NCBI RefSeq assembly: GCF_006345805.1
Contig: NW_021825202.1
Location: 1 to 16,417 of the forward strand
Length of the DNA stretch: 16,417 bases
Origin: Octopus sinensis
Taxonomy: Eukaryota
Direction of reading: 5' to 3'
The notes beneath the pieces were generated by a model, which did no database searches, was not told where the DNA came from, and worked only from the letters and a program-made list of their open reading frames with translations. The position numbers were made by a program, and so were the translations under genes. Below, one piece after another: positions 1-16,160 of the stretch. How positions within the stretch are numbered: the stretch's first letter is position 1; the number at the start of each line of letters is the position of its first letter.

Positions 1-150
1 GGGCGGTGTGGTAACATGCTTACTTCCTAACCGCATAGTTCTCGGTTCATTCCCACTACGTGGAACCTTGGGCACGTGTCTTCTACTATAGCTTCGAGGC
101 GATTAAAGCCTTGTGAGTGGATGTGGTAGACGGAAACTGAAAGAAGCCCG

Positions 151-152
<2 letters not shown>
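1..152 (+). mobile_element. 5' half (tRNA-like head plus CORE-like domain) of a composite SINE, truncated by window start
   Basis: Matches 9734-9893 and the reverse complement of 2310-2470 (ccttgggca.gtgtcttctactatagc...gccttgtgagtggat.tggtagacggaaactgaaagaagcccgtc); ends in (TA)n at 153-194. Confidence 0.9.
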
Positions 153-196
<44 letters not shown>

Positions 197-335
197 CATA
201 AGGGACTAAAGCCATCTGAATATGGCTAGGGACAGGGCAGGGTGGTGGGGGTGTTACTGTTGCATTTAGGCTTGACACCATCACGGCGTCCTCTATCCTG
301 CAAAGGGAGATAATTCCCCGATGAAGCAGAAACCA

Positions 336-380
336 CACACGGACCTAGGTTTCAAGGTGTTTGCCTATTATCAACGTATG
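336..380 (-). ncRNA. Type I hammerhead ribozyme, U3-A8 core variant (copy A1)
   Basis: Minus strand reads CAUACG UUGAUAA U AGG CAAACA CCU U GAA ACCUAGGU C CGUGUG. Stem I is 6 bp with one G.U, stem II is AGG/CCU, stem III is the palindrome ACCUAGGU, and the cleavage triplet is GUC (site between 342 and 341). Confidence 0.75.
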
Positions 381-699
381 TAGCAAGGCAAGCCCTTTCC
401 TCGACGAACAACTCACTCTGCAGGATATTTATATATAGATTTTCAAGCAAAATACATTTGCTGATTTCGAAAATCTGTTCGATAGCAATAATAATTCTCT
501 AAATGAGATATAGACAGTAACTGCTCCATAACATAAGGGACTAAAGCCATCTGAATATGGCTAGGGACAGGGCAGGGTGGTGGGGTGTTACTGTTGCATT
601 TAGCCCCAGGCGAACATCAACGTCGCCAGATAGGCTTGACACCATCACGGCGTCCTCTATCCTGCAAAGGGAGATAATTCCCCGATGAAGCGGAAACCA

Positions 700-745
700 C
701 ACACGGACCTAGGTTTCAGGAGGTGTTTGCTATTATCAACGTATG
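700..745 (-). ncRNA. Hammerhead copy A2 with disrupted stem II
   Basis: Stem I, core UUGAUAA, GAA, ACCUAGGU and GUC match A1, but stem II reads UAGCAAACACCUCCU (indels; mutation or sequencing error). Confidence 0.5.
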
Positions 746-943
746 GTAGGCAAACCGCTTCCTCGACGAACAACTCACTCTGCAGGATTTTATATATAGA
801 TTTTCAAGCAAAATACATTTGCTGATTTCGAAAATCTGTTCGACAGCAGCAATAATATTCGAAATCAGCAAATGTATTTTGCTTGAAAATCATATATAAA
901 TATCCTGCAGATTGAGTTGTTCGTCGAGGAAGCGGTTGCCTAC

Positions 944-987
944 CATACGTTGATAATAGGCAAAACCTTGAAACCTAGGTCCGTGTG
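944..987 (+). ncRNA. Hammerhead copy A3 in the inverted arm
   Basis: CATACG TTGATAA T AGG CAAAA CCT T GAA ACCTAGGT C CGTGTG; predicted cleavage after 981. Confidence 0.75.
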
Positions 988-1223
988 TGGTTTCCGCTTC
1001 ATCGGGGAATTATCTCCATTTGCAGGATAGAGGACGCCGTGATGGTGTCAAGCCTATCTGGCGACGTTGATGTTCGCCTGGGGCTAAATGCAACAGTAAC
1101 ACTCCCACCACCCTGCCCTGTCCCTAGCCATATTCAGATGGCTTTAGTCCCTTATGTTATGGAGCAGTTACTGTCTATATCTCATTTAGAGAATTATTAT
1201 TGCTATATATATATGTATATATG

Positions 1224-1257
<34 letters not shown>

Positions 1258-1330
1258 TGTATGTATGTATGTATGTGTGTGTGTGTGTGTTTGATTTTTT
1301 GTGTATGTGTGTCTTTTAGTATGTATTTGT

Positions 1331-1465
1331 GGCAACCGGCGTTGGTGTGTTTACGTCCCTGTAGCTTAGTGGTTCGGCAAAAGAGATCAAGCTTTAGAAA
1401 ATAATAAGTCCCAGGGTTGATTCATTCGAGTAAAAATTCTTCATGGCGTTGCCCCAGCATGGCCG
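1331..1465 (+). mobile_element. 3' half of the composite SINE whose head is at 1-152
   Basis: caaccggcgttggtgtgtttacgtccctgtagcttagtggttcggcaaaagaga...ccagcatggcc matches 10757-10892; preceded by (TATG)/(TG) microsatellite. Confidence 0.8.
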
Positions 1466-1772
1466 AGGTTGGTTAGCATATCAGTAGCTTAATATATTAG
1501 TTGTTTAACTAATAAGTAGGTTAACAGGTTAGTTGGTTAACAGATCAGTAGGTTAACCGTTAAGATGGCTAACGGATTAGATTAACATATGAGTAGGCTA
1601 AGTAGATTAGCTGGTTAAATGGTAAGTCGGTTTACGATGTTGACAGATCAGTATGTTACAAGATAAATAGATTTAAGCAGATTAGCGTGTTAATAGATCA
1701 GATTAACACTTCATAAATTTAAAAGAACAATGAGTTAACAGATCAATAGGTCAAAAGATCAATAAGTTAATG
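1466..1772. repeat. Degenerate minisatellite with GTTAACAGATCAGTAG-like motif
   Basis: Recurring gttaacagatcagtag, gttgacagatcagtat, gttaatagatcagatt and gttaacagatcaatag variants. Confidence 0.7.
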
Positions 1773-2006
1773 TTCCAGATTGAATAGAATATTTTTCACT
1801 TTGTTTTCTATTTTTTTTTTCTTTCAGAATTTTAGATAATATTGTAAATTAAATTTTAACAGTCGAAAAGAAAAACTCCTGCTTTACAAAATGGTTTACT
1901 GTTCCTATGGGTAGTATATTTCTAAGTCTCAACAGTTTATCAATAGTTCACCTCCGATGATATAGCCTCTGTTTAATCATAGTCATTCTCAGGTGAATTC
2001 GGAAGA

Positions 2007-2265
2007 TACTCTTTTTTTTACTCTTTTACTTGTTTCAGTCATTTGACTGCAGCTATCCTGGAGCAACGCCTTTAGTCGACAAAATCGACCCCTCGACTTA
2101 TTCTTTGTAAGCCTAGGACTTATTCTATCGGTCTCTTTTGCCGAACCGCTAAGTTACGGGGACATAAAACACACAGCGTCGGTGCCAGGCGATGTTGGGG
2201 GACAAACACAGACACACAAACATATACACACCATACATACATATATTATATATATATATATATAT

Positions 2266-2297
<32 letters not shown>

Positions 2298-2470
2298 ATA
2301 ACATATATACGACGGGCTTCTTTTCAGTTTCCGTCTACCAAATCCACTCACAAGGCTTTGGTCAGCCCGAGGCTACAGTAGAAGACACTTGCCCAAGGTA
2401 CCACGTAGTGGGACTGAACCCGGAACCATATGGTTGGTAAGCAAGCTACTCACCAATCAGTTACTCCTAC
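2007..2470 (-). mobile_element. Complete composite SINE (head, internal (TA)/(TG) microsatellite, tail ending in GAGTAAAA-type repeats)
   Basis: Reverse complement of head (2310-2470) and tail (2007-2220) are joined through (TA)n at about 2236-2308. Confidence 0.9.
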
Positions 2471-2610
2471 GCCTATACGGAATTCGCAAATATCTTCTCA
2501 AGGTTAATGGAGAGAAAGAGTGCGTGCGTGTTTGTGTCTCCTTTTCTTGACATACTATGATAATTGCAAAGGAGTGTCACTGTCACCCAAGCAGTGGCAT
2601 TAATTGTCAT

Positions 2611-2784
2611 TATTACCTTGATTGGAAAACAGGTGAGATCTGACGACAGGAAGGGCGTCTGTACAAAGAAAATCTGCCTCAATAAACTCCGTCCGATACA
2701 AGTAAGCTTGAAAAAGTGGACGCCAGAATGATGATGATGACGATGATGATGATGATGATGAAGATGATGCTGATGATGATGATG
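2611..2784 (+). mobile_element. 3' end of a retroposon-like repeat with (GAT)n tail
   Basis: acaggaagggcgtctgtac...gaaaaagtggacgccaga followed by (GAT)n at 2728-2784; family not named. Confidence 0.55.
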
Positions 2785-2793
2785 CATACAACC

Positions 2794-2932
2794 AGCTTCC
2801 ACACAGTTTCTATTTACCCAATTCTACCACGAATCATTTGTCACCCTAGGGCTGTAATATAAGACTCTTTCTCAAGGTACCCTGCAATGGAATTGAACTC
2901 GAAGTCTAATGGTTGGAAACCAAGCTTCTTGA
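2794..2932 (-). mobile_element. Strongly decayed SINE head copy
   Basis: Patchy match to the head family (cagtttctatttaccca, ctcaaggtacc, aattgaactc). Confidence 0.55.
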
Positions 2933-2979
2933 GCGCTCACTATTCAATTCTGTACATCACACCTAATACTCTATACATA

Positions 2980-3116
2980 CTTCTTCCAGTTTCCCTCTAC
3001 AAAATCCACTCACAAGGTTTTGGCCAGCCAAAGGTCATAGTAGAAGACACTTGCCCAAGGTGCCACGAAGTAGGAGTAAACTAGGAACCATGTGGTTGCG
3101 AAGCAAGCTACTTACC
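2980..3116 (-). mobile_element. SINE head copy
   Basis: aatccactcacaagg...gtagaagacacttgcccaaggtgccac...gaaccatgtggttgcgaagcaagctacttacc. Confidence 0.85.
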
Positions 3117-3196
3117 TTAAAATCACTTCTGCACCTATCTATCTATTTCTCTGTCTCTGTCTCTCTCTCTCTCTCTCTATCTATTTATCTACACAC

Positions 3197-3232
<36 letters not shown>

Positions 3233-3262
3233 ACACACACATATATATATATACATATATAC

Positions 3263-3352
3263 GTGAAGGCGCGTGTCCTCGTTTTTAGACTGTTGCACTC
3301 ACGATCGCCAGATGGAGTGCTTGAGCAAAATACTTCATTTCACGTTGTTCCA
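3263..3352 (+). mobile_element. Decayed fragment of the second tRNA-SINE family
   Basis: gtgaaggcgcgtg...ctcacgatcg...ttgagcaaaatacttcatttcacgttgttcca resembles the reverse complement of 7945-8059. Confidence 0.6.
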
Positions 3353-5077
3353 GACCCGACCTTTGCTAAAACAATGCAAAACGCATTGTGACCTGCGATG
3401 TCGGTCACGTGTCAGGTAATATGTATATGTATGTGTGTGTATGAATGTGTGTGTGCGTGTATGTGCATGCATGTATGTAAGCATGTGTTTCTAATTTAGT
3501 TCTTTCTTGTGTAAACTAAAGAAAGAATATTCTTGAAATGAATTACGGCTATGTTGGAAGAGTTTTCTTCATATAATCTGTATATTTTATTGAATTATAT
3601 ATATAATATATTGTTCAAAAGACTTAACATATACATATAGCGATGAACAGCCAACATAGACTTGTATTTAAAACATGTTTACATTTCTTTCGATAAAGAA
3701 GAGATGTTATATTTGAATGAAAACTGTTTCTCCTTCCTCTGGTTACGAACTTTCTGATATAGAAAGGAGAAAAAATATCTAGAACACTACGTTAATCGAG
3801 GTATTAGCGTATATATATATATATATATATATTTCTCCGTATATGCATGTGTGTCGTGTATGCGTAAGTGTATCTGCATATATACATACATAACATATAC
3901 ACACACACATATATATATATATATATTATATCAGGTAACCAGATGTGTATGAGTGTGTATGGAGCACTGTATGCGGACAGTTGTTTGTCCAAACATATTG
4001 ACCAATGTAATCAGTAAACTGTCGCAGCAAATGTGATGTATTGGCCAGTGTCCAATCAATAAAGAAACACGAACCCACAGAAAGGAATATAGATTGTGAA
4101 AACACAACAAGTTCCGGTATAATGGCGAACTTTCAGCTTTGTTTGTAGATGAGGTTATAAACTGACAGACGTGGGACAAAGAATATGTCAGTTACTAACA
4201 CATTCACAAACACTCGTACACCACACGCACACACAGAAACACACACGGAAACGCGCACGCAAATGCGCGCGCGCACACACACACACACACATCGCCACAA
4301 GTGTGTTGATTATAATTGACATTAGAAGGACAACAATGGTGAATTATTTCCAGACAGATAAGTAACCCATTTCTTACATATAGAGATTCGTGTATATGGC
4401 TTCATAGATGTAAACACACATTCGTGCATGTGTATATATACATATATGATATATATACATATATGATATATATACATATATGATATATTAATAAATAAAA
4501 CATATGCATATATATGTACATATATGTACGTACCTACCTCTACATGTATATATACACGCATATATGAGTACAGGACACCAAAAAAATGTCGAACACAATG
4601 AGAAACGAAAACATAGACACAAACACAAGGAACTGGACATTTTTCTTAAACAACAAAAAAAGAGTACAGGACAAATAACACAAGGAAAAAACCCCTTCTT
4701 CAGTCGCCATGGTTTCATCTACTCCACGTTTCGAAGGTAAAGGCGAGACGTAACTTCGATAAGAAACTTTCGTTCTTGCGAAAAGCAAATCAAATAAAAT
4801 TTGAGATCTTTTTGCAGAGGGGTAAAATGGTAACAAAACCAGGACAGTAACGACAGTACAAAATATAAGCAGTAAAGGACAGGACAAGGAAAATAACAAG
4901 ACAAGAAGGGCTGTTAACGCCGAACGAAAAAAAGGAGTACGAACGCTAAATTCTGTGAACGGCGAACGGAGCAAAGAGAATTGCCGTCCACACCTCAAGA
5001 AGGTACATGCTAGAAAGACAGTAGCGGAGCTCTCGTCGCGGGTCAACGACGGGTGGGAGGAGGAGGAGGAGCAAGAG

Positions 5078-5257
5078 AATCCAAACAAGAAAACACAAAG
5101 AAAACAAAAAAAATAGAGCAACGCGAGGACGTGGAACAAATAAAATATTATTGGACGCTCAGGAAAGATGGGAAGAAGGAGGGTTTAACGTTTCGAGCGG
5201 AGCTCTTCGTCGGAAACATAGGAGAGGAAAGATCCCGAGAAGGGAAGACAGAGGAAA

Positions 5258-5291
<34 letters not shown>

Positions 5292-5301
5292 TATGTATGT
5301 A

Positions 5302-5332
<31 letters not shown>

Positions 5333-5364
5333 TCCTCTGTCTTCCTTCTCCTATGTTTCCGACG
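5078..5364 (-). mobile_element. Element D1: PLE-type terminal repeat (5078-5258) plus an inverted partial copy (5330-5364) across a (TA)n tract
   Basis: Homologous to 16035-16160. Segment 5330-5364 is the reverse complement of 5208-5258 lacking about 16 nt. Confidence 0.75.
5183..5217 (-). ncRNA. Minimal hammerhead-like motif, variant core (D1)
   Basis: GUUU CCGACGA A GAGC UCC GCUC GAA ACGU U AAAC. Stem I is 4 bp and stem II 4 bp, with palindrome ACGU; the core has C at position 4 and an extra A after A9. Confidence 0.6.
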
Positions 5365-5377
5365 TGTGTATATATAT

Positions 5378-5408
<31 letters not shown>

Positions 5409-5643
5409 CAGCTATTGCTGGAAATTACCATATGTATATGCAGTTTATGTAGTAGTGGTGGGGTGGCATGAGTGCATGTGTGATGCACTTGAGAATCTTT
5501 TTCCGTTTAACCAATCTAGTTTCGTCCGATCGAATTCGTGTGTATGTGTGTGTGTGTGTGTGTGTGTTATCCATATATCACTGTCGCTGTATTGTCAGCT
5601 ATATATATATATATATATATGCGTAGATACAGACACGCACGCA

Positions 5644-5676
<33 letters not shown>

Positions 5677-5905
5677 GCTAAAGCATATCCAGGCGATTTC
5701 CCCCCTCCCACACGTCTACTTCTAACGCTTCCTTCTGTTCTCGTAGATCTCGCTCTCCACTCCTTGTTGTCCACCCACGTATTTATACAATACATGGCGA
5801 AAGTTGAATGTCCGCCGGTTAAGCGCTTTGACGTCATTTATGCATTTACACATGAATATAAATGCACCCATACATAGATATATAATCATGTATATATTAT
5901 ATATA

Positions 5906-5943
<38 letters not shown>

Positions 5944-5977
5944 GTATGTATGTATTATATATATATTTATATTTATG

Positions 5978-6566
5978 TAATAGACATATTAAAATAACTA
6001 AGTCTCTCTAAAAGAGAACAGCGGCAGCGTTCCCGGAAAATAATAGTTATCGCCATACTAATATGGCATTCTTATAAAAATAAGAAAAAAGCTGTCCGCT
6101 TATTAGCTCCATGAGGCCATCGCCTTAAGTTAGCTATTTGATACACAAACTGTATCCATATAACCTTCGAACAAGGGAGGTCAGTCGCTCCACACTACTT
6201 GACCGGCAGCTACAGACGCGTTTCGGGGTATTGCCCTTTTCAATGCAGCGTAGCCAGCCAGTAGGTGTCGCTTCCGACAATCTCGTTCGATGGTTTTATT
6301 TACCTAGTTTCGGTGGGAATACATCCACTTGTTTTCAATAATAGAAATATTAAAATAACTAAGTCTCTCTAAAAGAGAACAGCGGCAGCGTTCCCGGAAA
6401 ATAATAGTTATCGCCATACTAATATGGCATTGTTCGAAGGTTATATGGATACAGTTTGTGTATCAAATAGCTAACTTAAGGCGATGGCCTCATGGAGCTA
6501 ATAAGCGGACAGCTTTTTTCTTATTTTTATAAGAATGCCATATTAGTATGGCGATAACTATTATTT
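5978..6566 (-). mobile_element. Element B: 361-nt unit with 93-nt terminal direct repeat and 137-nt inverted segment
   Basis: 5978-6070 is repeated at 6339-6431 (1 mismatch). Segment 6430-6566 is the exact reverse complement of 6038-6174. (TA)-rich flanks. Confidence 0.85.
6209..6249 (-). ncRNA. Type I hammerhead ribozyme, U3-A8 core variant (B)
   Basis: GCUGCA UUGAAAA GGG CAAUAC CCC GAA ACGCGU C UGUAGC. Stem I is 6 bp and extendable, G10.1-C11.1 is present, stem III is the palindrome ACGCGU; GUC site between 6215 and 6214. Confidence 0.85.
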
Positions 6567-6635
6567 ATATTTATGTATATGCATATATAAATTTATGTAT
6601 ATATGTATATATTTTGTGTATACATACATACACAC

Positions 6636-8176: not shown

Positions 8177-9105
8177 CTATTTCTTGCTGATGATTGTGAT
8201 ATAGGATTTCGTACAGAACAAGCACTGTAAGATCTGATTATAGTTTTTAATGATTAAGGTTTTGCTTTGGAAATGCATTTGAAGAAAACAGAACTTATCT
8301 TATCGGTTTCACATGGAATGCCATATGTTAAACCAAAGATGTTAGCAAGAGATTAAGAATTGAAAGTAAAGAATCCTTATTCTCATCCGGGAAGGGCACC
8401 GTCAGATAGTGCAAGTTTTGGGAAGGCTTTTGGAAATCTGGAAAGCAGGCTTTAACCAAGCAAGGGATCAGATTAAGCGTAAAGACACCTATCTACAAAA
8501 CGTGCATGCTCTCGGCTTTATTGAATGGCTGTTAAACTTGGATGATCTACAAAATCATATTAAGATGCTCGAATGGTTTCACCAATGCTGTGAATATGAA
8601 GTGGACCACACACACCTTGAATACCGCAGTTCTAGAGAAGGCTCAAATGATTAGCATAGAAGTTATCATCGTTTGGAGTGTTTTAAGGTGGAGTGGAATT
8701 GTTTGAATGAGTAGTACCAGAATTCCAAAACAACTGTCTTATGGGAATTTAAAACCAAGAAAGATCAAAGCTTCATAACCCAAACAGCGGTACGAAGACT
8801 TCGAGATAAACTTGAAGAAATGTACGGTTACTAGAGAGAACTGGGAAGGCAAGCAAACGTGGGGAAATCTATCTCTGATGGTTTGGCGTTACTTGAAAGA
8901 GAAATAATTAGTCATACAAAAGAGCAATTCCATTGAGGAAATAGGCAAGAAAACATCAAAAGCTGAGAAAAAGCTGGTTCCAAGAGCCACGTGTATGGCG
9001 AAACGATGAAGTCGAAAACTGACAAGAAAAGTCATCTACGAAGTCAAGTAAGGAAAAAGACTCGAGAAGAAATCCCAAGACGCCATAATCAAGTACAAGT
9101 TGACA
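8177..9105 (+). pseudogene. Decayed 3' portion of an RTE-clade LINE reverse transcriptase ORF
   Basis: Ordered motifs across frameshifts and stops: [88 protein letters not shown]. Confidence 0.9.
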
Positions 9106-9733: not shown

Positions 9734-9893
9734 GTAGGAGTGGCTGTGTGGTAAGTAGCTTGCTTACCAACCACATGGTTACGAGTTCAGTCCCATTGCG
9801 TGGCACCTTGGGCAAATGTATTCTACTATAGCCTCGGGCCGACCAAAGCCTTGTGAGTGGATTTGGTAGACGGAAACTGAAAGAAACTCGTCG
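9734..9893 (+). mobile_element. Composite SINE head (tail at 10717-10940)
   Basis: ggagtggctgtgtggtaagtagc...gttcagtccc...gtggcaccttgggcaaatgt...gacggaaactgaaagaa then (TA)n. Confidence 0.9.
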
Positions 9894-9895
9894 TA

Positions 9896-9926
<31 letters not shown>

Positions 9927-10136
9927 TATGTGAAATAGAAAGATGAATAATCTTGTAGTAGATTAATCAACATTTAACCGATACCTTAGTAGCAAAAATC
10001 ACAGCAGTAAACAGCACGGTTGGAGGTACAACCATCTGGCGTTGCAACCGTGCGTTGGTGCGGATAATTGAAATTAAAACATTATTGGTGAATTGAAGAA
10101 ATGGAGCTGAACGCAGATTGAACAGAAATCGTTTTA

Positions 10137-10225
10137 TTTCATTCTACACGTGTTTCGAAAGGCACAAATTACCAAAATCCGATTGAATAATGGGACCATA
10201 TTGTGTCTTTCTCTTCAGGAAGAAA
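10137..10225 (-). ncRNA. Type I hammerhead ribozyme, canonical core (C, left arm)
   Basis: Reverse complement of 10501-10589. Confidence 0.85.
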
Positions 10226-10500
10226 AAAGGAAATCCGTTGGAAAAACAAAAACAGAACAGAGGCGGAGCAAAAAACAAATCGAACTGTGCTCCTAAATAG
10301 TCAGAACTTTATTCTCGGTCACAAAGAACATCTATACACCCTCACCCACATGATTGACCGATGCCTGACCCGTTGAATTCTTCAGCCACCGTTCTCAACA
10401 TACACTGATAACAGTTTCGCCATGGGCTCTTAGGAGCACAGTTCGATTTGTTTTTTGCTCCGCCTCTGTTCTGTTTTTGTTTTTCCAACGGATTTCCTTT

Positions 10501-10589
10501 TTTCTTCCTGAAGAGAAAGACACAATATGGTCCCATTATTCAATCGGATTTTGGTAATTTGTGCCTTTCGAAACACGTGTAGAATGAAA
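10501..10589 (+). ncRNA. Type I hammerhead ribozyme, canonical core (C, right arm)
   Basis: TTTCTTC CTGAAGA GAAAG-ACACAA...TTGTG-C-CTTTC GAA ACACGTGT A GAATGAAA. Core is CUGAAGA, stem II is long, stem III is the palindrome ACACGUGU, GUA site after 10581, and stem I has a single U bulge. Confidence 0.85.
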
Positions 10590-10642
10590 TAAAACGATTT
10601 CTGTTCAATCTGCGTTCAGCTCCATTTCTTCAATTCACCAAT

Positions 10643-10704
<62 letters not shown>

Positions 10705-10716
10705 ACGTGTGTATAT

Positions 10717-10940
10717 ATGTTTGTGTGTCTATGTTTGTCTCCCCCAACATCGCTTGACAACCGGTGCTGGTGTGTTTACGTCCCCGTAACTTAGCGGTTC
10801 GGCAAAAGAGACCGATAGTATAAGTACTAGGCTTACAAAGAATATGTCTTGGGGTTGATGTGCTCTACTAAAGGCGATGCTCCAGCATGGCCACAGTCAA
10901 ATGACTGAAACAAGTAAAAGAGTAAAAGAGTAAAAGAGTA
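10717..10940 (+). mobile_element. Composite SINE tail
   Basis: gtttacgtccccgtaacttagcggttcggcaaaagagaccgatag...aatgactgaaacaagtaaaa(gagtaaaa)n. Confidence 0.9.
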
Positions 10941-11356: not shown

Positions 11357-11645
11357 TATTGGGTTTTCCGGAAAGTTCGTGCCGATTTTTAAAGGAAAGA
11401 AAAAAGGTCAATAAATACTTGCCATTACATTTTTAATCAACCAAATACGAACCATTTTGTTGCACAATGCGTCTCCAACTTTCCTTTAACTTGAAAATAC
11501 CCTCTTCCCAGAATTGACGTGGGTTCATGGCAAAGAATTCATCTAGGTATCGTTTTACGTCATCCAAAGAATTGAAATTTTTACCATTAAGACTATTCTG
11601 CAGAGACCTGGATAAGTGGAAATCCTAAGGAGCAATATCTGGTGA
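11357..11645 (-). mobile_element. Mariner transposon 3' end (transposase C-terminus plus TIR)
   Basis: 11645-11433 reads SPDIAP*DFHLSRSLQNSLNGKNFNSLDDVKRYLDEFFAMNPRQFWEEGIFKLKESWRRIVQQNGSYLVD*, a YSPDLAPSD-type motif. The end TA-TTGGGTTTTCC is TIR-like. Confidence 0.92.
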
Positions 11646-13373: not shown

Positions 13374-13629
13374 CTTTTGGATGTTGTACATTTAGTTGCA
13401 AACCAAATGCTTATTTATTTAGCGTCGTTTAAACGTTATGGAATATAGAGTACAGATAATGGAGTATAACGTTACATTGTTTTGTATAGACAAATATTTT
13501 TTCGTTTTTTTCCATCGATTCTCAAATCTGGTGGCGTCGTAAAGTCGCCCTCATGACTTACAACTTGTATTTCTCATTTTACAAGGGATACTGAGATGTC
13601 CCTGGCTTTAAGGGTATAGCTTAAGGGCT

Positions 13630-13800
13630 TGTTGAAGATCTAACCTTCCGAGTTCTTTTACAGGGCTTAGAAAAACTGAAAGACCGCTGCAATAAGTGTG
13701 TAAATCCGAGAGGAGAATATGTTGAATAAAATCATAATTAACTGATCCTCCTGTATTTTCTTTTACCCAAAGACAAGGAACTTTAGAGAATTCCCTCGTA
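13630..13800 (+). mobile_element. Second mariner 3' end fragment
   Basis: GLEKLK/DRCNKCVNPRGEYVE* (stop at 13727-13729) followed by a TIR-like end ggaacttt...ccctcgTA. Confidence 0.8.
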
Positions 13801-14300: not shown

Positions 14301-14824
14301 AGAGCCCGAATAGATAAAGGGCAAAGTTGAATCCGGTGATATCTGAACTCAGAAAAAAACCATAACTAGAATAAATCTCGCAAATCTTTTCATACAACGT
14401 TCGAACGACTGAGCCAACAAATCATCGTTGGAATATAATTTATAATGTTTAGAATCTGTCAAATAATTAGTTTCTGTGATGTGTGAGAGGAACTCTTCAA
14501 AGTGGAGATTAAATAACAAATGGCTGTGAAACAAAATGGCTGTTCACACGAAACTGCTTTTATCGTTATTTGCTATATCTAAAGACAAACTTACGTCAAA
14601 GGAAACAAGGAAAGTTTTGCGTTTGTGTTAATAAAAATACGTAGAATATGATAAGTTAGCGTGGTGTAAAGGGCAGATGGGTTGTGAGGTTTACAAATGT
14701 TGTTAATACATTAATTTGATGTTCAGTACATGCTGTTGATCTCTGGTTCGTGTGTTCGTAAATGGCTAAATGACTTTTATATAATATTATATAATTACAA
14801 ATGTGATTTTTATCATTTATCTTA

Positions 14825-15210
14825 TACTTGTTTCAGTGATTAGACTGCGGTCATGGCGGAGCACCGCAATGGCCAATTTCAGTACTTATTCTATCGGTCA
14901 CTTTGACCGAACCGCTGCTTTACTGGGACGTAAATACACCAACACCGGTTGTCAAGTTGTGGTGAGGGTAAAACACACACACACACAAACATACACACAT
15001 ATGTGTGCCTGTGTGTGTGTGTGTTTGTCTGCGTTTATATGCACACGAGGGACTTCTTTTAGGTTCCGTCTACTAAAACCACTCACAATACCTGGGTTGG
15101 CCTGAGGCTATCTTGGAAGGCACTTGTCCAATGTGCCACACCGTGGATCTGGAACTGGAACCATGTGGCTGGGAAGCAAATTTCTTAACACGCATCTACG
15201 CCTGCGCCTA
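14825..15210 (-). mobile_element. Older complete composite SINE (tail, CA/TG spacer, head)
   Basis: Diverged match to 2007-2470 in the same order. Confidence 0.8.
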
Positions 15211-15507
15211 TATATATACACGAATGTATGCATCCACTTGTATATATACATATGTAAATATATATACACACACACACAAACACACATACAGACATATTTA
15301 TAAATACATATATATATATGTATGTACGTACACACATGCACCCCCACACATATATATATATATATAAATACAAACCAACACATAAACATACACACAAAAA
15401 CACGTACTCGCACATATCCGTCTTAAACTAAACATTACTCACCTGTAACGATTATCTTCTCCGGCTCTCAATTAGTTTCTAGTAAAACTGTTATTGTGCA
15501 AAACTAA

Positions 15508-16034: not shown

Positions 16035-16160
16035 ATGTTTCCGACGAAGAGCTCCGCTCGAAACGTCATACCTCCCTGCTTCTTTCCTGAGCGCCTATTG
16101 ATAATAATACTGTAATTGTTCCATTGTTGTTGTTTTTTGTTTCCCGTTTGGATTAAAATT
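16035..16160 (+). mobile_element. Element D2: second copy of the PLE-type terminal repeat
   Basis: atgtttccgacgaagagctccgctcgaaacgt is identical to D1; then ctttcctgagcg...ttgttcc...gtttggatt and (TA)n. Confidence 0.75.
16037..16071 (+). ncRNA. Minimal hammerhead-like motif, variant core (D2)
   Basis: GTTT CCGACGA A GAGC TCC GCTC GAA ACGT C ATAC; GUC triplet, stem I has one mismatch. Confidence 0.5.

What the first reader, a model, noticed from the sequence alone, without database searches (positions are those of the whole stretch)
193..6566. Elements A and B are diverged members of one ~360-nt hammerhead (retrozyme-like) family with conserved architecture
Seen: the unit is 364 nt between cleavage sites in A (342 to 706) and 361 nt in B. 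Colinear landmarks lie at near-identical offsets: hairpin TCTCTAAAWGAGA (496-508 / 6005-6017), hairpin GCCAT-N3-AATATGGC (546-561 / 6052-6067), TTAGCYCCA (600 / 6103), AAGGGAG (667 / 6173), hammerhead site (706 / 6215), CGCTTCC (756 / 6269) and AATACAT (812 / 6318). Most intervening sequence differs. Established: metazoan retrozymes are non-coding tandem units of a few hundred nt with type I hammerheads that yield circular RNAs. Inference: this is an old, structurally constrained cephalopod family of such elements; whether it has been described cannot be told from the window.
Basis: partly seen in the sequence, partly recalled or inferred. Interest (0 to 1): 0.92.

Follow-up and report, generated by a model that had tools for sequence, protein, structure and literature searches.

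The report
Hammerhead-bearing mini Penelope-like retroelements
Two diverged copies of a roughly 360-base non-coding mobile element carry a variant hammerhead-ribozyme motif and show the insertion scars typical of Penelope-like retrotransposons, so they are a new member of the known "retrozyme" class, not a new kind of element.

Summary
Elements A (193-1206) and B (5978-6566) share a 364/361-nt non-coding unit. All six landmarks sit at the stated coordinates. The units are about 50% identical, yet they align colinearly far better than shuffles do (z 5.6-8).

Both carry a type I hammerhead-like motif on the minus strand of their long arm. It has a 6-bp helix I, a 3-bp helix II and a short palindromic helix III (ACCUAGGU / ACGCGU), and four pairs change compensatorily between A and B.

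The interpretation needs three corrections:
- **Non-canonical core.** It reads UUGANAA (U3-A8 in place of C3-G8), and no Rfam hammerhead model matches even at E<=10. This covariation is already published for Penelope-like element (PLE) hammerheads.
- **Fewer ribozymes than implied.** B has one hammerhead, and one of A's three has a damaged helix II.
- **Not tandem arrays.** Each locus is a partial tandem plus a head-to-head inverted arm set in (TA)n. One arm ends at unit position 177/178 and the other at 224/237, each just after a conserved hairpin. That is the PLE signature of both strands primed, two internal reverse-transcription starts and a one-sided tail.

Best reading: non-autonomous, PLE-mobilised retrozyme-like elements. 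Catalysis, circular RNA, copy number and cephalopod origin could not be tested.

The parts
153..195 (.). (AT)n microsatellite abutting the 3' end of A's left arm
   Evidence: TRF period 2, 21.5 copies; junction ...GTTAT|ATATAT
193..858 (-). Element A, long arm: 1.9 units on the hammerhead strand (unit positions about 212-364, 1-364, 1-178). The 3'-most unit (193-527) lacks about 30 nt.
   Evidence: Direct repeats D14-D16 and D20, spacing 335-364; arm alignment; end positions
859..1206 (+). Element A, inverted arm: nearly one full unit (unit position 236 round to 224), head-to-head with the long arm
   Evidence: Inverted repeats I5, I8, I13 at 97-100%; 343 matches, 2 mismatches and 8 gap columns against the adjacent unit
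332..384 (-). Hammerhead-like motif, A copy 1. Core UUGAUAA ... GAAA, helix III CCUAGG, GUC with C17 at 342. Passes the descriptor.
   Evidence: 73.8 bits with model R1
696..749 (-). Hammerhead-like motif, A copy 2, C17 at 706. Helix II is disrupted (UAGCAAACACCUCCU), so it fails the descriptor.
940..991 (+). Hammerhead-like motif in A's inverted arm, C17 at 981. Passes the descriptor.
   Evidence: 84.3 bits
546..561 (-). Conserved hairpin 1 of A (GCCAU-AUUCAG-AUGGC, unit positions 145-160). Other copies at 211-226 (-) and 1127-1142 (+). It lies 18 nt upstream of arm end site 1.
   Evidence: helix 12 invariant
496..508 (-). Conserved hairpin 2 of A (UCUC-AUUUA-GAGA, unit positions 198-210). 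Another copy at 1180-1192 (+). It lies 14 nt upstream of arm end site 2.
1204..1290 (.). (TA)n/(TATG)n/(TG)n microsatellite abutting the 3' end of A's inverted arm
   Evidence: TRF; sequence
5900..5977 (.). (TA)n-rich microsatellite abutting the 3' end of B's long arm
   Evidence: TRF period 2, 39.5 copies
5978..6429 (-). Element B, long arm: 1.25 units on the hammerhead strand (unit positions 147-361, then 1-237)
   Evidence: Direct repeat D13, 96 nt, 98%, spacing 361
6430..6566 (+). Element B, inverted arm (unit positions 41-177). It contains no hammerhead.
   Evidence: Inverted repeat I4, 137 nt, 100%
6205..6253 (-). B's only hammerhead-like motif. Core UUGAAAA ... GAAA, helix III CGCG, GUC with C17 at 6215.
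   Evidence: 60.4 bits
6052..6067 (-). Conserved hairpin 1 of B (GCCAU-AUUAGU-AUGGC, unit positions 148-163). Other copies at 6413-6428 (-) and 6537-6552 (+).
6003..6017 (-). Conserved hairpin 2 of B (UCUCU-UUUAG-AGAGA, unit positions 198-212). Another copy at 6364-6378 (-).
6567..6630 (.). AT-rich simple repeat abutting the 3' end of B's inverted arm
   Evidence: TRF

Best explanation
A and B are two old, diverged lineages of one short (361-364 nt), non-coding, non-autonomous retroelement. It is a retrozyme-like mini Penelope-like element (PLE) that an autonomous PLE reverse transcriptase / GIY-YIG endonuclease inserts into (TA)n microsatellites.

The unit has three functional parts:
1. A type I hammerhead-like ribozyme with a U3-A8 core pair. 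Its helix III is too short to close on its own, so two copies must pair through the palindromes ACCUAGGU (A) or ACGCGU (B) to form a double hammerhead.
2. A 38-44-bp rod that extends helix I.
3. Two conserved hairpins, each followed by a U/A-rich site where reverse transcription starts.

Proposed cycle. A multimeric transcript, or a monomer cut at GUC and then ligated into a circle, is bound by the PLE protein. The protein nicks both strands of AT-rich DNA. Each 3'-OH primes cDNA synthesis from one of the two internal start sites (unit position about 178 or about 224-237). Synthesis runs back through the ribozyme junction for more than one unit, and the two cDNAs meet head-to-head.

Shown here: the sequence architecture, the A-B homology, compensatory changes in the hammerhead helices, the shared arm ends and the microsatellite flanks. 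Inferred: transcription, cleavage, circularisation and the identity of the mobilising enzyme.
For: Homology of A and B:
-, with the landmarks.

Hammerhead-like motif:
- A descriptor accepting C3-G8 or U3-A8, helix I >=4 bp, helix II >=3 bp, GAAA, a short helix III and UH hits 374-342(-), 950-981(+) and 6243-6215(-). The expectation is 0.0025 hits per shuffled window.
- On the four-copy alignment 97.7% of cells pair, against 12-63% in slid controls. Four pairs change on both sides between A and B: three in helix I and one in helix II.
- Co-folding two copies gives the double hammerhead with an intermolecular helix III. It is 4.4 kcal/mol (A copy 1) and 6.1 kcal/mol (B) more stable than two monomers.
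- The U3-A8 covariation, short palindromic helix III and paired motifs 100-700 bp apart on opposite strands are all described for PLE hammerheads (PMC4209133). A U-U mismatch at the base of helix II occurs in axolotl retrozymes (PMC7229834).

Non-coding, self-paired unit:
- The longest stop-free stretch in a tandem unit is 57-70 aa, and Pfam finds nothing.
- GC is 42-44%.
- Monomers fold with z -3.0 (A) and -7.1 (B). In both, nt 1-48/57 pair with nt 277/279-331/332.

PLE-type insertion:
- Both loci are a partial tandem plus an inverted arm, with 3' ends pointing outward into TA-rich repeats.
- Arm ends fall at unit positions 178 and 224 in A and 177 and 237 in B. One arm therefore carries a 46-60-nt tail.
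- Craig et al. describe partial tandems, an adjacent inverted 5'-truncated copy, a one-sided tail and (TA)n bias (PMC8557442).
- Frangieh et al. show that a PLE protein cleaves and extends both strands of AT-rich DNA and starts reverse transcription at two internal sites that define the tail (PMC11167929).
- Retrozymes as PLE derivatives.
- PLEs are annotated in Octopus vulgaris (PMC13282606).
Against: - No Rfam hammerhead family matches, even at E<=10 on small sub-regions.
- Two of the eleven core nucleotides differ from consensus, and activity of this variant was not measured.
- PLE minimal hammerheads cleave poorly in vitro, and the anole PLE ribozyme needs its protein.
- The descriptor was written after I had seen the sequences.
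- Only two independent lineages exist, so covariation rests on a single comparison. Projecting one monomer's MFE structure onto the other keeps only 56% of pairs, against 30-48% in controls.
- B has one hammerhead and A's copy at 706 is damaged, so these loci may be dead copies.
- No further copy, autonomous partner or transcript could be examined.
- A's three unit copies differ by 7-13 mutational events, including a 30-nt indel. Rolling-circle copying of a single circle is therefore not demonstrated.
- The 100% identical inverted arms could partly be assembly artefacts.
Confidence: 0.68

Rival explanations
1. The units are not free-standing elements. They are pieces of an autonomous, already catalogued PLE (pseudo-LTR, UTR or an internal UTR repeat), seen here as heavily 5'-truncated insertions.
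For: PLE insertions are typically 5'-truncated and carry their hammerheads in pseudo-LTRs. Xenopus retrozymes are sequence-related to PLE pseudo-LTRs. Family C in this window looks like a longer PLE-type element with its own minimal hammerhead-like motif. Repbase and Dfam could not be queried.
Against: Both arms that exceed one unit repeat with a 361-364-nt period, so the 3' start site is joined directly to the same short unit and not to kilobases of ORF. Two lineages only 50% identical keep the same unit length. There is no ORF and no Pfam hit.
Confidence: 0.15
2. The hammerhead-like motif is a non-catalytic relic or a protein-binding fold. The elements still move by PLE machinery from unprocessed multimeric transcripts, and no circular RNA is involved.
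For: For the anole PLE, ribozyme mutants do not affect insertion and unprocessed RNA is the dominant template. Minimal PLE hammerheads cleave poorly. Rfam finds nothing here. A's tandem units are not identical.
Against: The core, the helices and the palindromic helix III are kept between lineages that are otherwise 50% identical, with compensatory changes. The 3-8 pair is replaced by another Watson-Crick pair and not lost. All arms long enough to do so read straight through the cut site, as expected from ligated circles or uncleaved multimers.
Confidence: 0.3
3. A and B are DNA-level structures with a chance hammerhead resemblance: foldback or MITE-like DNA transposons targeting TA, local satellite DNA rearranged by replication errors, or assembly artefacts.
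For: The loci have long inverted arms, some 100% identical (I4, I1). Flanks are TA-rich, and Tc1/mariner-type MITEs target TA (my own knowledge). Mariner remnants are present in the window.
Against: The termini are not inverted copies of each other. In A, end 1206 pairs with 482 and not with 193, and the extra 289 nt is a direct repeat. The hammerhead descriptor expects 0.0025 chance hits per window but hits two independent lineages. The two lineages share the same two arm-end positions.
Confidence: 0.05

Closest known systems
Metazoan non-LTR retrozymes (Cervera & de la Pena 2020, PMC7229834; review PMC7761336)
   Same: Non-coding units of 170-400 nt with GC below 50%. They carry a type I hammerhead with a weak, palindromic helix III that works as a dimer, the monomer is highly self-paired, and copies occur as more than one unit. 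PLEs are proposed as the mobilising partner.
   Different: Here the core is U3-A8 and not the canonical C3-G8 of the 'classical' type I motifs. No recognisable loop 1 / loop 2 tertiary contact is evident. The loci are 1.25-1.9-unit partial tandems with an inverted arm, not multimeric arrays. Circular RNA was not tested. No cephalopod example turned up in the searchable literature.
Minimal hammerheads in pseudo-LTRs of Penelope-like elements, including the U3-A8 variant of Schistosoma Cercyon (Cervera & de la Pena 2014, PMC4209133)
   Same: The U3-A8 covariation in the core, a very short palindromic helix III implying dimers, pairs of motifs on opposite strands 100-700 bp apart, and mostly dispersed non-coding copies.
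   Different: Minimal PLE motifs have a long helix II (7-8 bp) and a short helix I (4-5 bp). A and B instead have a 3-bp helix II and a 6-bp helix I that continues into a rod of about 40 bp, as retrozymes do. The repeat period is 360 nt and not about 3 kb.
PLE insertion architecture and mechanism (Craig et al. 2021, PMC8557442; Frangieh et al. 2024, PMC11167929)
   Same: Partial tandem, an adjacent inverted 5'-truncated copy, an AT-rich/(TA)n target, an extension ('tail') at one end only, two internal reverse-transcription start sites next to a stem-loop downstream of the hammerhead, and both DNA strands used as primers.
   Different: There is no RT/GIY-YIG ORF. The tail is 46-60 nt, against 30-40 nt. 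The start sites lie 177-237 nt after the cut site, against 85-92 nt in the anole element. The sites are U/A-rich, not AC-rich.
Newt satellite 2 and Schistosoma Sm-alpha hammerhead repeats (from my own knowledge; the newt satellite is also cited in PMC7229834)
   Same: Repeats of about 330 nt with type I hammerheads that cleave as double hammerheads.
   Different: Those have canonical cores and long tandem arrays or SINE-like dispersal. No sequence relationship was tested.

Membership tests
Hammerhead ribozyme, type I | Conserved core positions U4 G5 A6 N7 A9, G12 A13 A14, A15.1-U16.1 and H17 (cleavage triplet GUC) | tested here: met
   UUGAUAA / UUGAAAA ... GAAA ... GUC in A (342, 981) and B (6215)..
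Hammerhead ribozyme, type I | C3 and G8 in the core | tested here: not met
   Both lineages have U3 and A8, a Watson-Crick replacement. This covariation is reported as a natural PLE variant (PMC4209133). Activity of this pair was not measured here.
Hammerhead ribozyme, type I | Three helices around the core, with helix I open and helices II and III capped | tested here: met
   Helix I is 6 bp and helix II 3 bp. Helix III is 2-3 bp, palindromic and dimer-forming. 97.7% of cells pair and 4 pairs change compensatorily. Double-hammerhead co-fold.
Hammerhead ribozyme, type I | Match to the curated Rfam covariance models (Hammerhead_1 and relatives) | tested here: not met
   No hit at gathering score on the whole window, and none at E<=10 on 150-1250 or 5950-6600.
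Hammerhead ribozyme, type I | Self-cleavage at the predicted site | not testable with these tools
   Needs in vitro transcription of monomeric and dimeric constructs.
Metazoan non-LTR retrozyme | Short (about 170-400 nt) non-coding unit with low GC | tested here: met
   Units of 364 and 361 nt. Longest stop-free stretch 57-70 aa, with no Pfam hit. GC 0.44 and 0.42..
Metazoan non-LTR retrozyme | Tandem repeat with at least two consecutive complete hammerheads (criterion of the 2026 preprint) | tested here: inconclusive
   A has two direct motifs 364 nt apart, but the one at 706 has a broken helix II. B has one motif. TRF calls no array..
Metazoan non-LTR retrozyme | Highly self-paired monomer | tested here: met
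   MFE z -3.0 (A) and -7.1 (B). 57-63% of nucleotides pair in the circular fold. A 38-44-bp rod extends helix I..
Metazoan non-LTR retrozyme | Expression as linear and circular RNA of unit length | not testable with these tools
   No transcriptome data for the source organism could be reached.
Metazoan non-LTR retrozyme | Many dispersed genomic copies | not testable with these tools
   Only two loci are visible in the window. Protein-handle, contig and metagenome searches found nothing relevant.
Penelope-like element insertion (non-autonomous derivative) | Partial tandem plus an adjacent inverted 5'-truncated copy | tested here: met
   A: 193-858(-) and 859-1206(+). B: 5978-6429(-) and 6430-6566(+). 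The 3' ends point outward..
Penelope-like element insertion (non-autonomous derivative) | AT-rich / microsatellite target | tested here: met
   All four arm ends abut TA-rich simple repeats.
Penelope-like element insertion (non-autonomous derivative) | Two alternative 3' ends, giving a tail at one end only | tested here: met
   Ends at unit positions 178 and 224 (A) and 177 and 237 (B). The tail is 46-60 nt, longer than the published 30-40 bp..
Penelope-like element insertion (non-autonomous derivative) | Sequence relationship to an autonomous PLE with RT and GIY-YIG domains in the same genome | not testable with these tools
   There is no PLE ORF in the window and no access to the genome, Repbase or Dfam.
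MITE / foldback DNA transposon | Terminal inverted repeats at both ends of the element | tested here: not met
   In A the right end (1206) is complementary to 482 and not to the left end (193). The left 289 nt is a direct repeat. B is asymmetric in the same way..

The most novel reading that the evidence does not exclude
The unit is a minimal, self-contained template for a Penelope-like reverse transcriptase. It holds a U3-A8 double hammerhead plus two conserved hairpin / U-A-rich modules that act as the enzyme's two internal initiation sites. On this reading the insertion scars in A and B are natural footprints of dual-strand, internally initiated, target-primed reverse transcription of a retrozyme. 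That would give direct mechanistic evidence, beyond co-occurrence and phylogeny, that PLEs mobilise retrozymes, and it would come from a lineage (apparently cephalopod) where none has been described.
Probability: 0.35. Interest if true: 0.6.

Novelty: new member of a known kind. Interest (0 to 1): 0.45.

Why it matters
Hammerhead-bearing retrozymes and their suspected dependence on Penelope-like elements are known. The link, however, rests mainly on co-occurrence and on sequence relatedness in vertebrates.

If these loci are typical of a larger family, they would add three things:
- An invertebrate, apparently cephalopod, retrozyme lineage.
- A retrozyme-type ribozyme that carries the U3-A8 core pair so far reported for PLE minimal hammerheads.
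- Insertion footprints (both strands primed, two fixed start sites after conserved hairpins, a one-sided tail, a (TA)n target) that match what a purified PLE protein does in vitro.

That would make the mobilisation mechanism testable with defined RNA modules. It also matters for annotation: neither Rfam nor TRF reports these loci in this window, so pipelines built on those tools would probably miss them.

Tried and rejected
- **Rfam.** I ran gathering mode on the whole window and E-value mode on the two elements. There were no hammerhead hits. The only matches were microRNA-precursor models hitting A's palindrome centre far below threshold, which I rejected as artefacts of the hairpin shape.
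- **Spurious ORF as a handle.** I used the ORF inside A to try to fetch other copies. The protein database returned no candidate, and no encoding contig is on record.
- **LINE RT remnant as a route to host DNA.** The remnant at about 8400-8900 returned only five short metagenome proteins, so I abandoned this.
- **Metagenome scans.** The exact A motif gave 0 hits. A degenerate A/B core pattern gave 14 loci that score at most 23 bits with model R1, against 60-84 bits for the real copies. Most of these matches cover only the core and lack a convincing helix I, so I treated them as chance.
- **Model R1 over the window with filters off.** Only the four known copies appear, and the next best hit scores 10 bits.
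- **Relationship of A/B to the other (TA)n-embedded elements C and D.** None was found (z about 0).
- **Whole-monomer covariation.** The RNAalifold consensus looks strong (23 compensatory pairs against 1-6 in slid controls). It was derived from the same two lineages, though, and the independent projection test is weak. I therefore rely only on the hammerhead helices and on the shared rod architecture.
- **Literature and supplements.** I found no cephalopod retrozyme. Lunse et al. 2017 is not held.
- **tRNA scan.** Nothing was found.

Full report
**Observation**

The window is repeat-rich, with many microsatellites.

Element A spans 193-1206. Direct repeats are spaced 361-364 nt apart, or 335 nt where the first copy lacks about 30 nt. 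An inverted copy at 859-1206 matches 482-832 at 97-100% (D14-D16, D20, I5, I8, I13).

Element B spans 5978-6566. It has a 96-nt direct repeat spaced 361 nt apart (98% identical) and a perfect 137-nt inverted repeat, 6038-6174 against 6430-6566 (D13, I4).

**Is A-B similarity more than chance?**

I took the monomers on the hammerhead strand: A is the reverse complement of 342-705 (364 nt), and B is the permuted reverse complement of 5978-6338 (361 nt).

- They align colinearly over the whole unit, with 50% identity in ungapped columns.
- The local score is 25 against 11.9-12.1 +/- 1.6-1.8 for dinucleotide-preserving shuffles (z 7.2-8.0; 0/1000 and 0/300).
- The semi-global score gives z 5.6.
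- The reverse complement of B scores 1.5 on the semi-global score (A-B 13.5). Control 361/364-nt segments from elsewhere in the window reach at most 13 (against A) and 9 (against B) on that same score.
- Shared 7-mers at offsets within 8 nt cover 30 bases against 2.4 +/- 4.1 (1/2000).
- Two other (TA)n-embedded elements in the same window (C, D) show no similarity to A or B.

The homology is real but old.

**The ribozyme-like motif**

Rfam finds no hammerhead family, either at gathering score or at E<=10 on the small sub-regions.

Reading the sequence shows why. On the minus strand at 384-332 and 6253-6205, and on the plus strand at 940-991, the order is that of a type I hammerhead:

- helix I 5' strand
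- UUGAUAA (A) or UUGAAAA (B)
- helix II hairpin
- GAAA
- CCUAGG (A) or CGCG (B)
- UC, then the cut site
- helix I 3' strand

Positions 3 and 8 are U and A instead of C and G.

A descriptor allowing either Watson-Crick pair at 3-8 finds these three sites. It expects 0.0025 hits per shuffled window. I wrote the descriptor after seeing the sequences, although its elements are the standard ones. The fourth copy (C17 at 706) fails because helix II is disrupted.

On the four-copy alignment, 97.7% of cells pair against 12-63% in slid controls. Four pairs change on both sides between A and B, three in helix I and one in helix II. A covariance model built from this alignment finds only the four copies in the window, at 60-84 bits, with the next hit at 10 bits.

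Helix III cannot close on its own. The self-complementary ACCUAGGU and ACGCGU give a double hammerhead when two copies are co-folded, 4.4 and 6.1 kcal/mol better than two monomers.

Each unusual feature has precedent:
- The U3-A8 covariation is reported in PLE hammerheads (about 1,300 hits in Schistosoma), along with a short palindromic helix III and paired motifs on opposite strands 100-700 bp apart (PMC4209133).
- A U-U mismatch at the base of helix II occurs in axolotl retrozymes (PMC7229834).
- A swapped 3-8 pair partly restores cleavage in the anole PLE ribozyme (PMC11167929).

**The rest of the unit**

It is non-coding. The longest stop-free stretch in a tandemised unit is 57-70 aa, and there is no Pfam match. 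GC is 42-44%.

Both monomers fold well, with z -3.0 for A and -7.1 for B. In both, helix I continues into a 38-44-bp imperfect rod joining nt 1-48/57 to nt 277/279-331/332, just upstream of the core.

The RNAalifold consensus has 23 compensatory pairs against 1-6 in slid controls. It comes from only two lineages, however, and projecting one MFE structure onto the other gives just 56% pairing against 30-48%. I therefore claim a shared architecture and not a pair-by-pair conserved structure.

Two hairpins are conserved in sequence at the same unit positions. GCCAU-N6-AUGGC is at 145-160 in A and 148-163 in B. UCUC(U)-loop-(A)GAGA is at 198-210 in A and 198-212 in B.

**Architecture of the insertions**

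On the hammerhead strand, each locus consists of two arms that diverge head-to-head, with their 3' ends pointing outward into TA-rich simple repeats.

| Arm | Window coordinates | Unit positions covered | Cut sites crossed |
|---|---|---|---|
| A, long arm | 858 to 193 | about 212-364, 1-364, 1-178 | two |
| A, short arm | 859-1206 | 236 round to 224 | one |
| B, long arm | 6429 to 5978 | 147-361, then 1-237 | one |
| B, short arm | 6430-6566 | 41-177 | none |

In both lineages one arm ends at position 177/178, 14-18 nt after hairpin 1. The other ends at 224/237, 14-25 nt after hairpin 2. One end of each insertion therefore carries a 46-60-nt extension.

A more TA-like stretch at about 266-285 in A was not used as an end. 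TA microhomology alone therefore does not explain the choice of ends.

This is the published PLE signature. Craig et al. describe partial tandems, an adjacent inverted 5'-truncated copy, a one-sided tail and (TA)n insertion bias (PMC8557442). Frangieh et al. show that a purified PLE protein cleaves and extends both strands of AT-rich DNA and starts reverse transcription at two internal sites next to a stem-loop downstream of the hammerhead, with the tail being the sequence between them (PMC11167929).

The termini are not inverted copies of each other, which argues against a MITE or foldback DNA transposon.

**Interpretation**

The best-supported reading is a non-autonomous, PLE-mobilised, hammerhead-bearing mini-element. 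It belongs to the non-LTR retrozyme class (PMC7229834, PMC7761336), which a 2026 preprint derives from PLE pseudo-LTRs.

Two lineages only 50% identical keep the unit length, the ribozyme variant, the rod, the hairpins and the arm ends. Each also shows young copies, with arms 97-100% identical. This points to long-term constraint at the level of the element.

Several things remain open:
- **Template form.** It may be a ligated circle or an unprocessed multimer. A's three unit copies differ by 7-13 events, including a 30-nt deletion. That fits either post-insertion decay or a heterogeneous multimeric template.
- **Source loci.** B with its single hammerhead, and probably A, are insertion products. 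They need not be source genes.
- **Organism.** I could not verify it. PLEs are annotated in Octopus vulgaris and Rfam hammerheads in the giant squid. No cephalopod retrozyme turned up in the searchable literature.

**Limits**

These tools reach no cephalopod genome, Repbase or Dfam entry, or transcriptome. All attempts to find further copies failed or gave only chance-level hits.

The following all remain untested:
- catalysis
- circular RNA
- copy number
- the autonomous partner
- prior annotation

**Verdict**

This is a new member of a known kind. It has two modestly interesting features: a U3-A8 core in a retrozyme-type ribozyme, and PLE-type insertion footprints with two shared start sites.

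Noticed in passing
window 9927-10651: Element D is another (TA)n-embedded element. It has perfect 222-nt inverted arms (10075-10296 / 10430-10651), a 133-nt centre and a 148-nt one-sided extension (9927-10074). It has no hammerhead-like motif and no similarity to A or B. Its architecture resembles the PLE-type insertions.
   Followed up: partly
window 4560-5258 (-), 5326-5366 (+), 16036-16155 (+): Family C is a longer (TA)n-associated repeat with a minimal-hammerhead-like motif, CCGACGA-A-GAGC-UCC-GCUC-GAAA-CG-UY (U4 replaced by C), at 5215-5186 (-) and 16043-16070 (+). A short inverted piece lies across a (TA)n block. The 120-nt copy ends about 85 nt after the putative cut site, similar to the start-site distance reported for the anole PLE.
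   Followed up: partly
window 2-186, 9742-9926 (+); 2322-2476, 2984-3138, 15057-15211 (-): There are five copies (74-90% identical) of a roughly 155-185-nt SINE-like repeat, each adjoining a microsatellite. ARAGORN finds no tRNA-like gene in them.
   Followed up: no
window 2016-2183 and 10760-10927; 1330-1386 and 10755-10811; 14820-14934: A second dispersed repeat family is present, 80-89% identical, in direct and inverted orientation next to the SINE-like copies.
   Followed up: no
window about 8370-8900 (+); 11436-11624 (-); about 13600-13740: Decayed coding remnants are present: the C-terminal part of a LINE-type reverse transcriptase (52% identity to a metagenome protein; Pfam silent on the fragment) and mariner-like transposase tails with stops and frameshifts.
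   Followed up: partly
window 778-927: The centre of A's palindrome matches several plant and animal microRNA-precursor models far below their thresholds (for example MIR4208, 61 bits against a gathering score of 140). This is a generic long-hairpin effect and not a microRNA gene. Transcription through it would nevertheless give a long double-stranded RNA.
   Followed up: no
window 267-296 versus 631-660 region (unit positions about 75-104): The outermost A unit lacks a 30-nt segment (CTATCTGGCGACGTTGATGTTCGCCTGGGG) that is present in the other two A copies and has a counterpart in B. The deletion is bounded by a short CTA repeat.
   Followed up: partly
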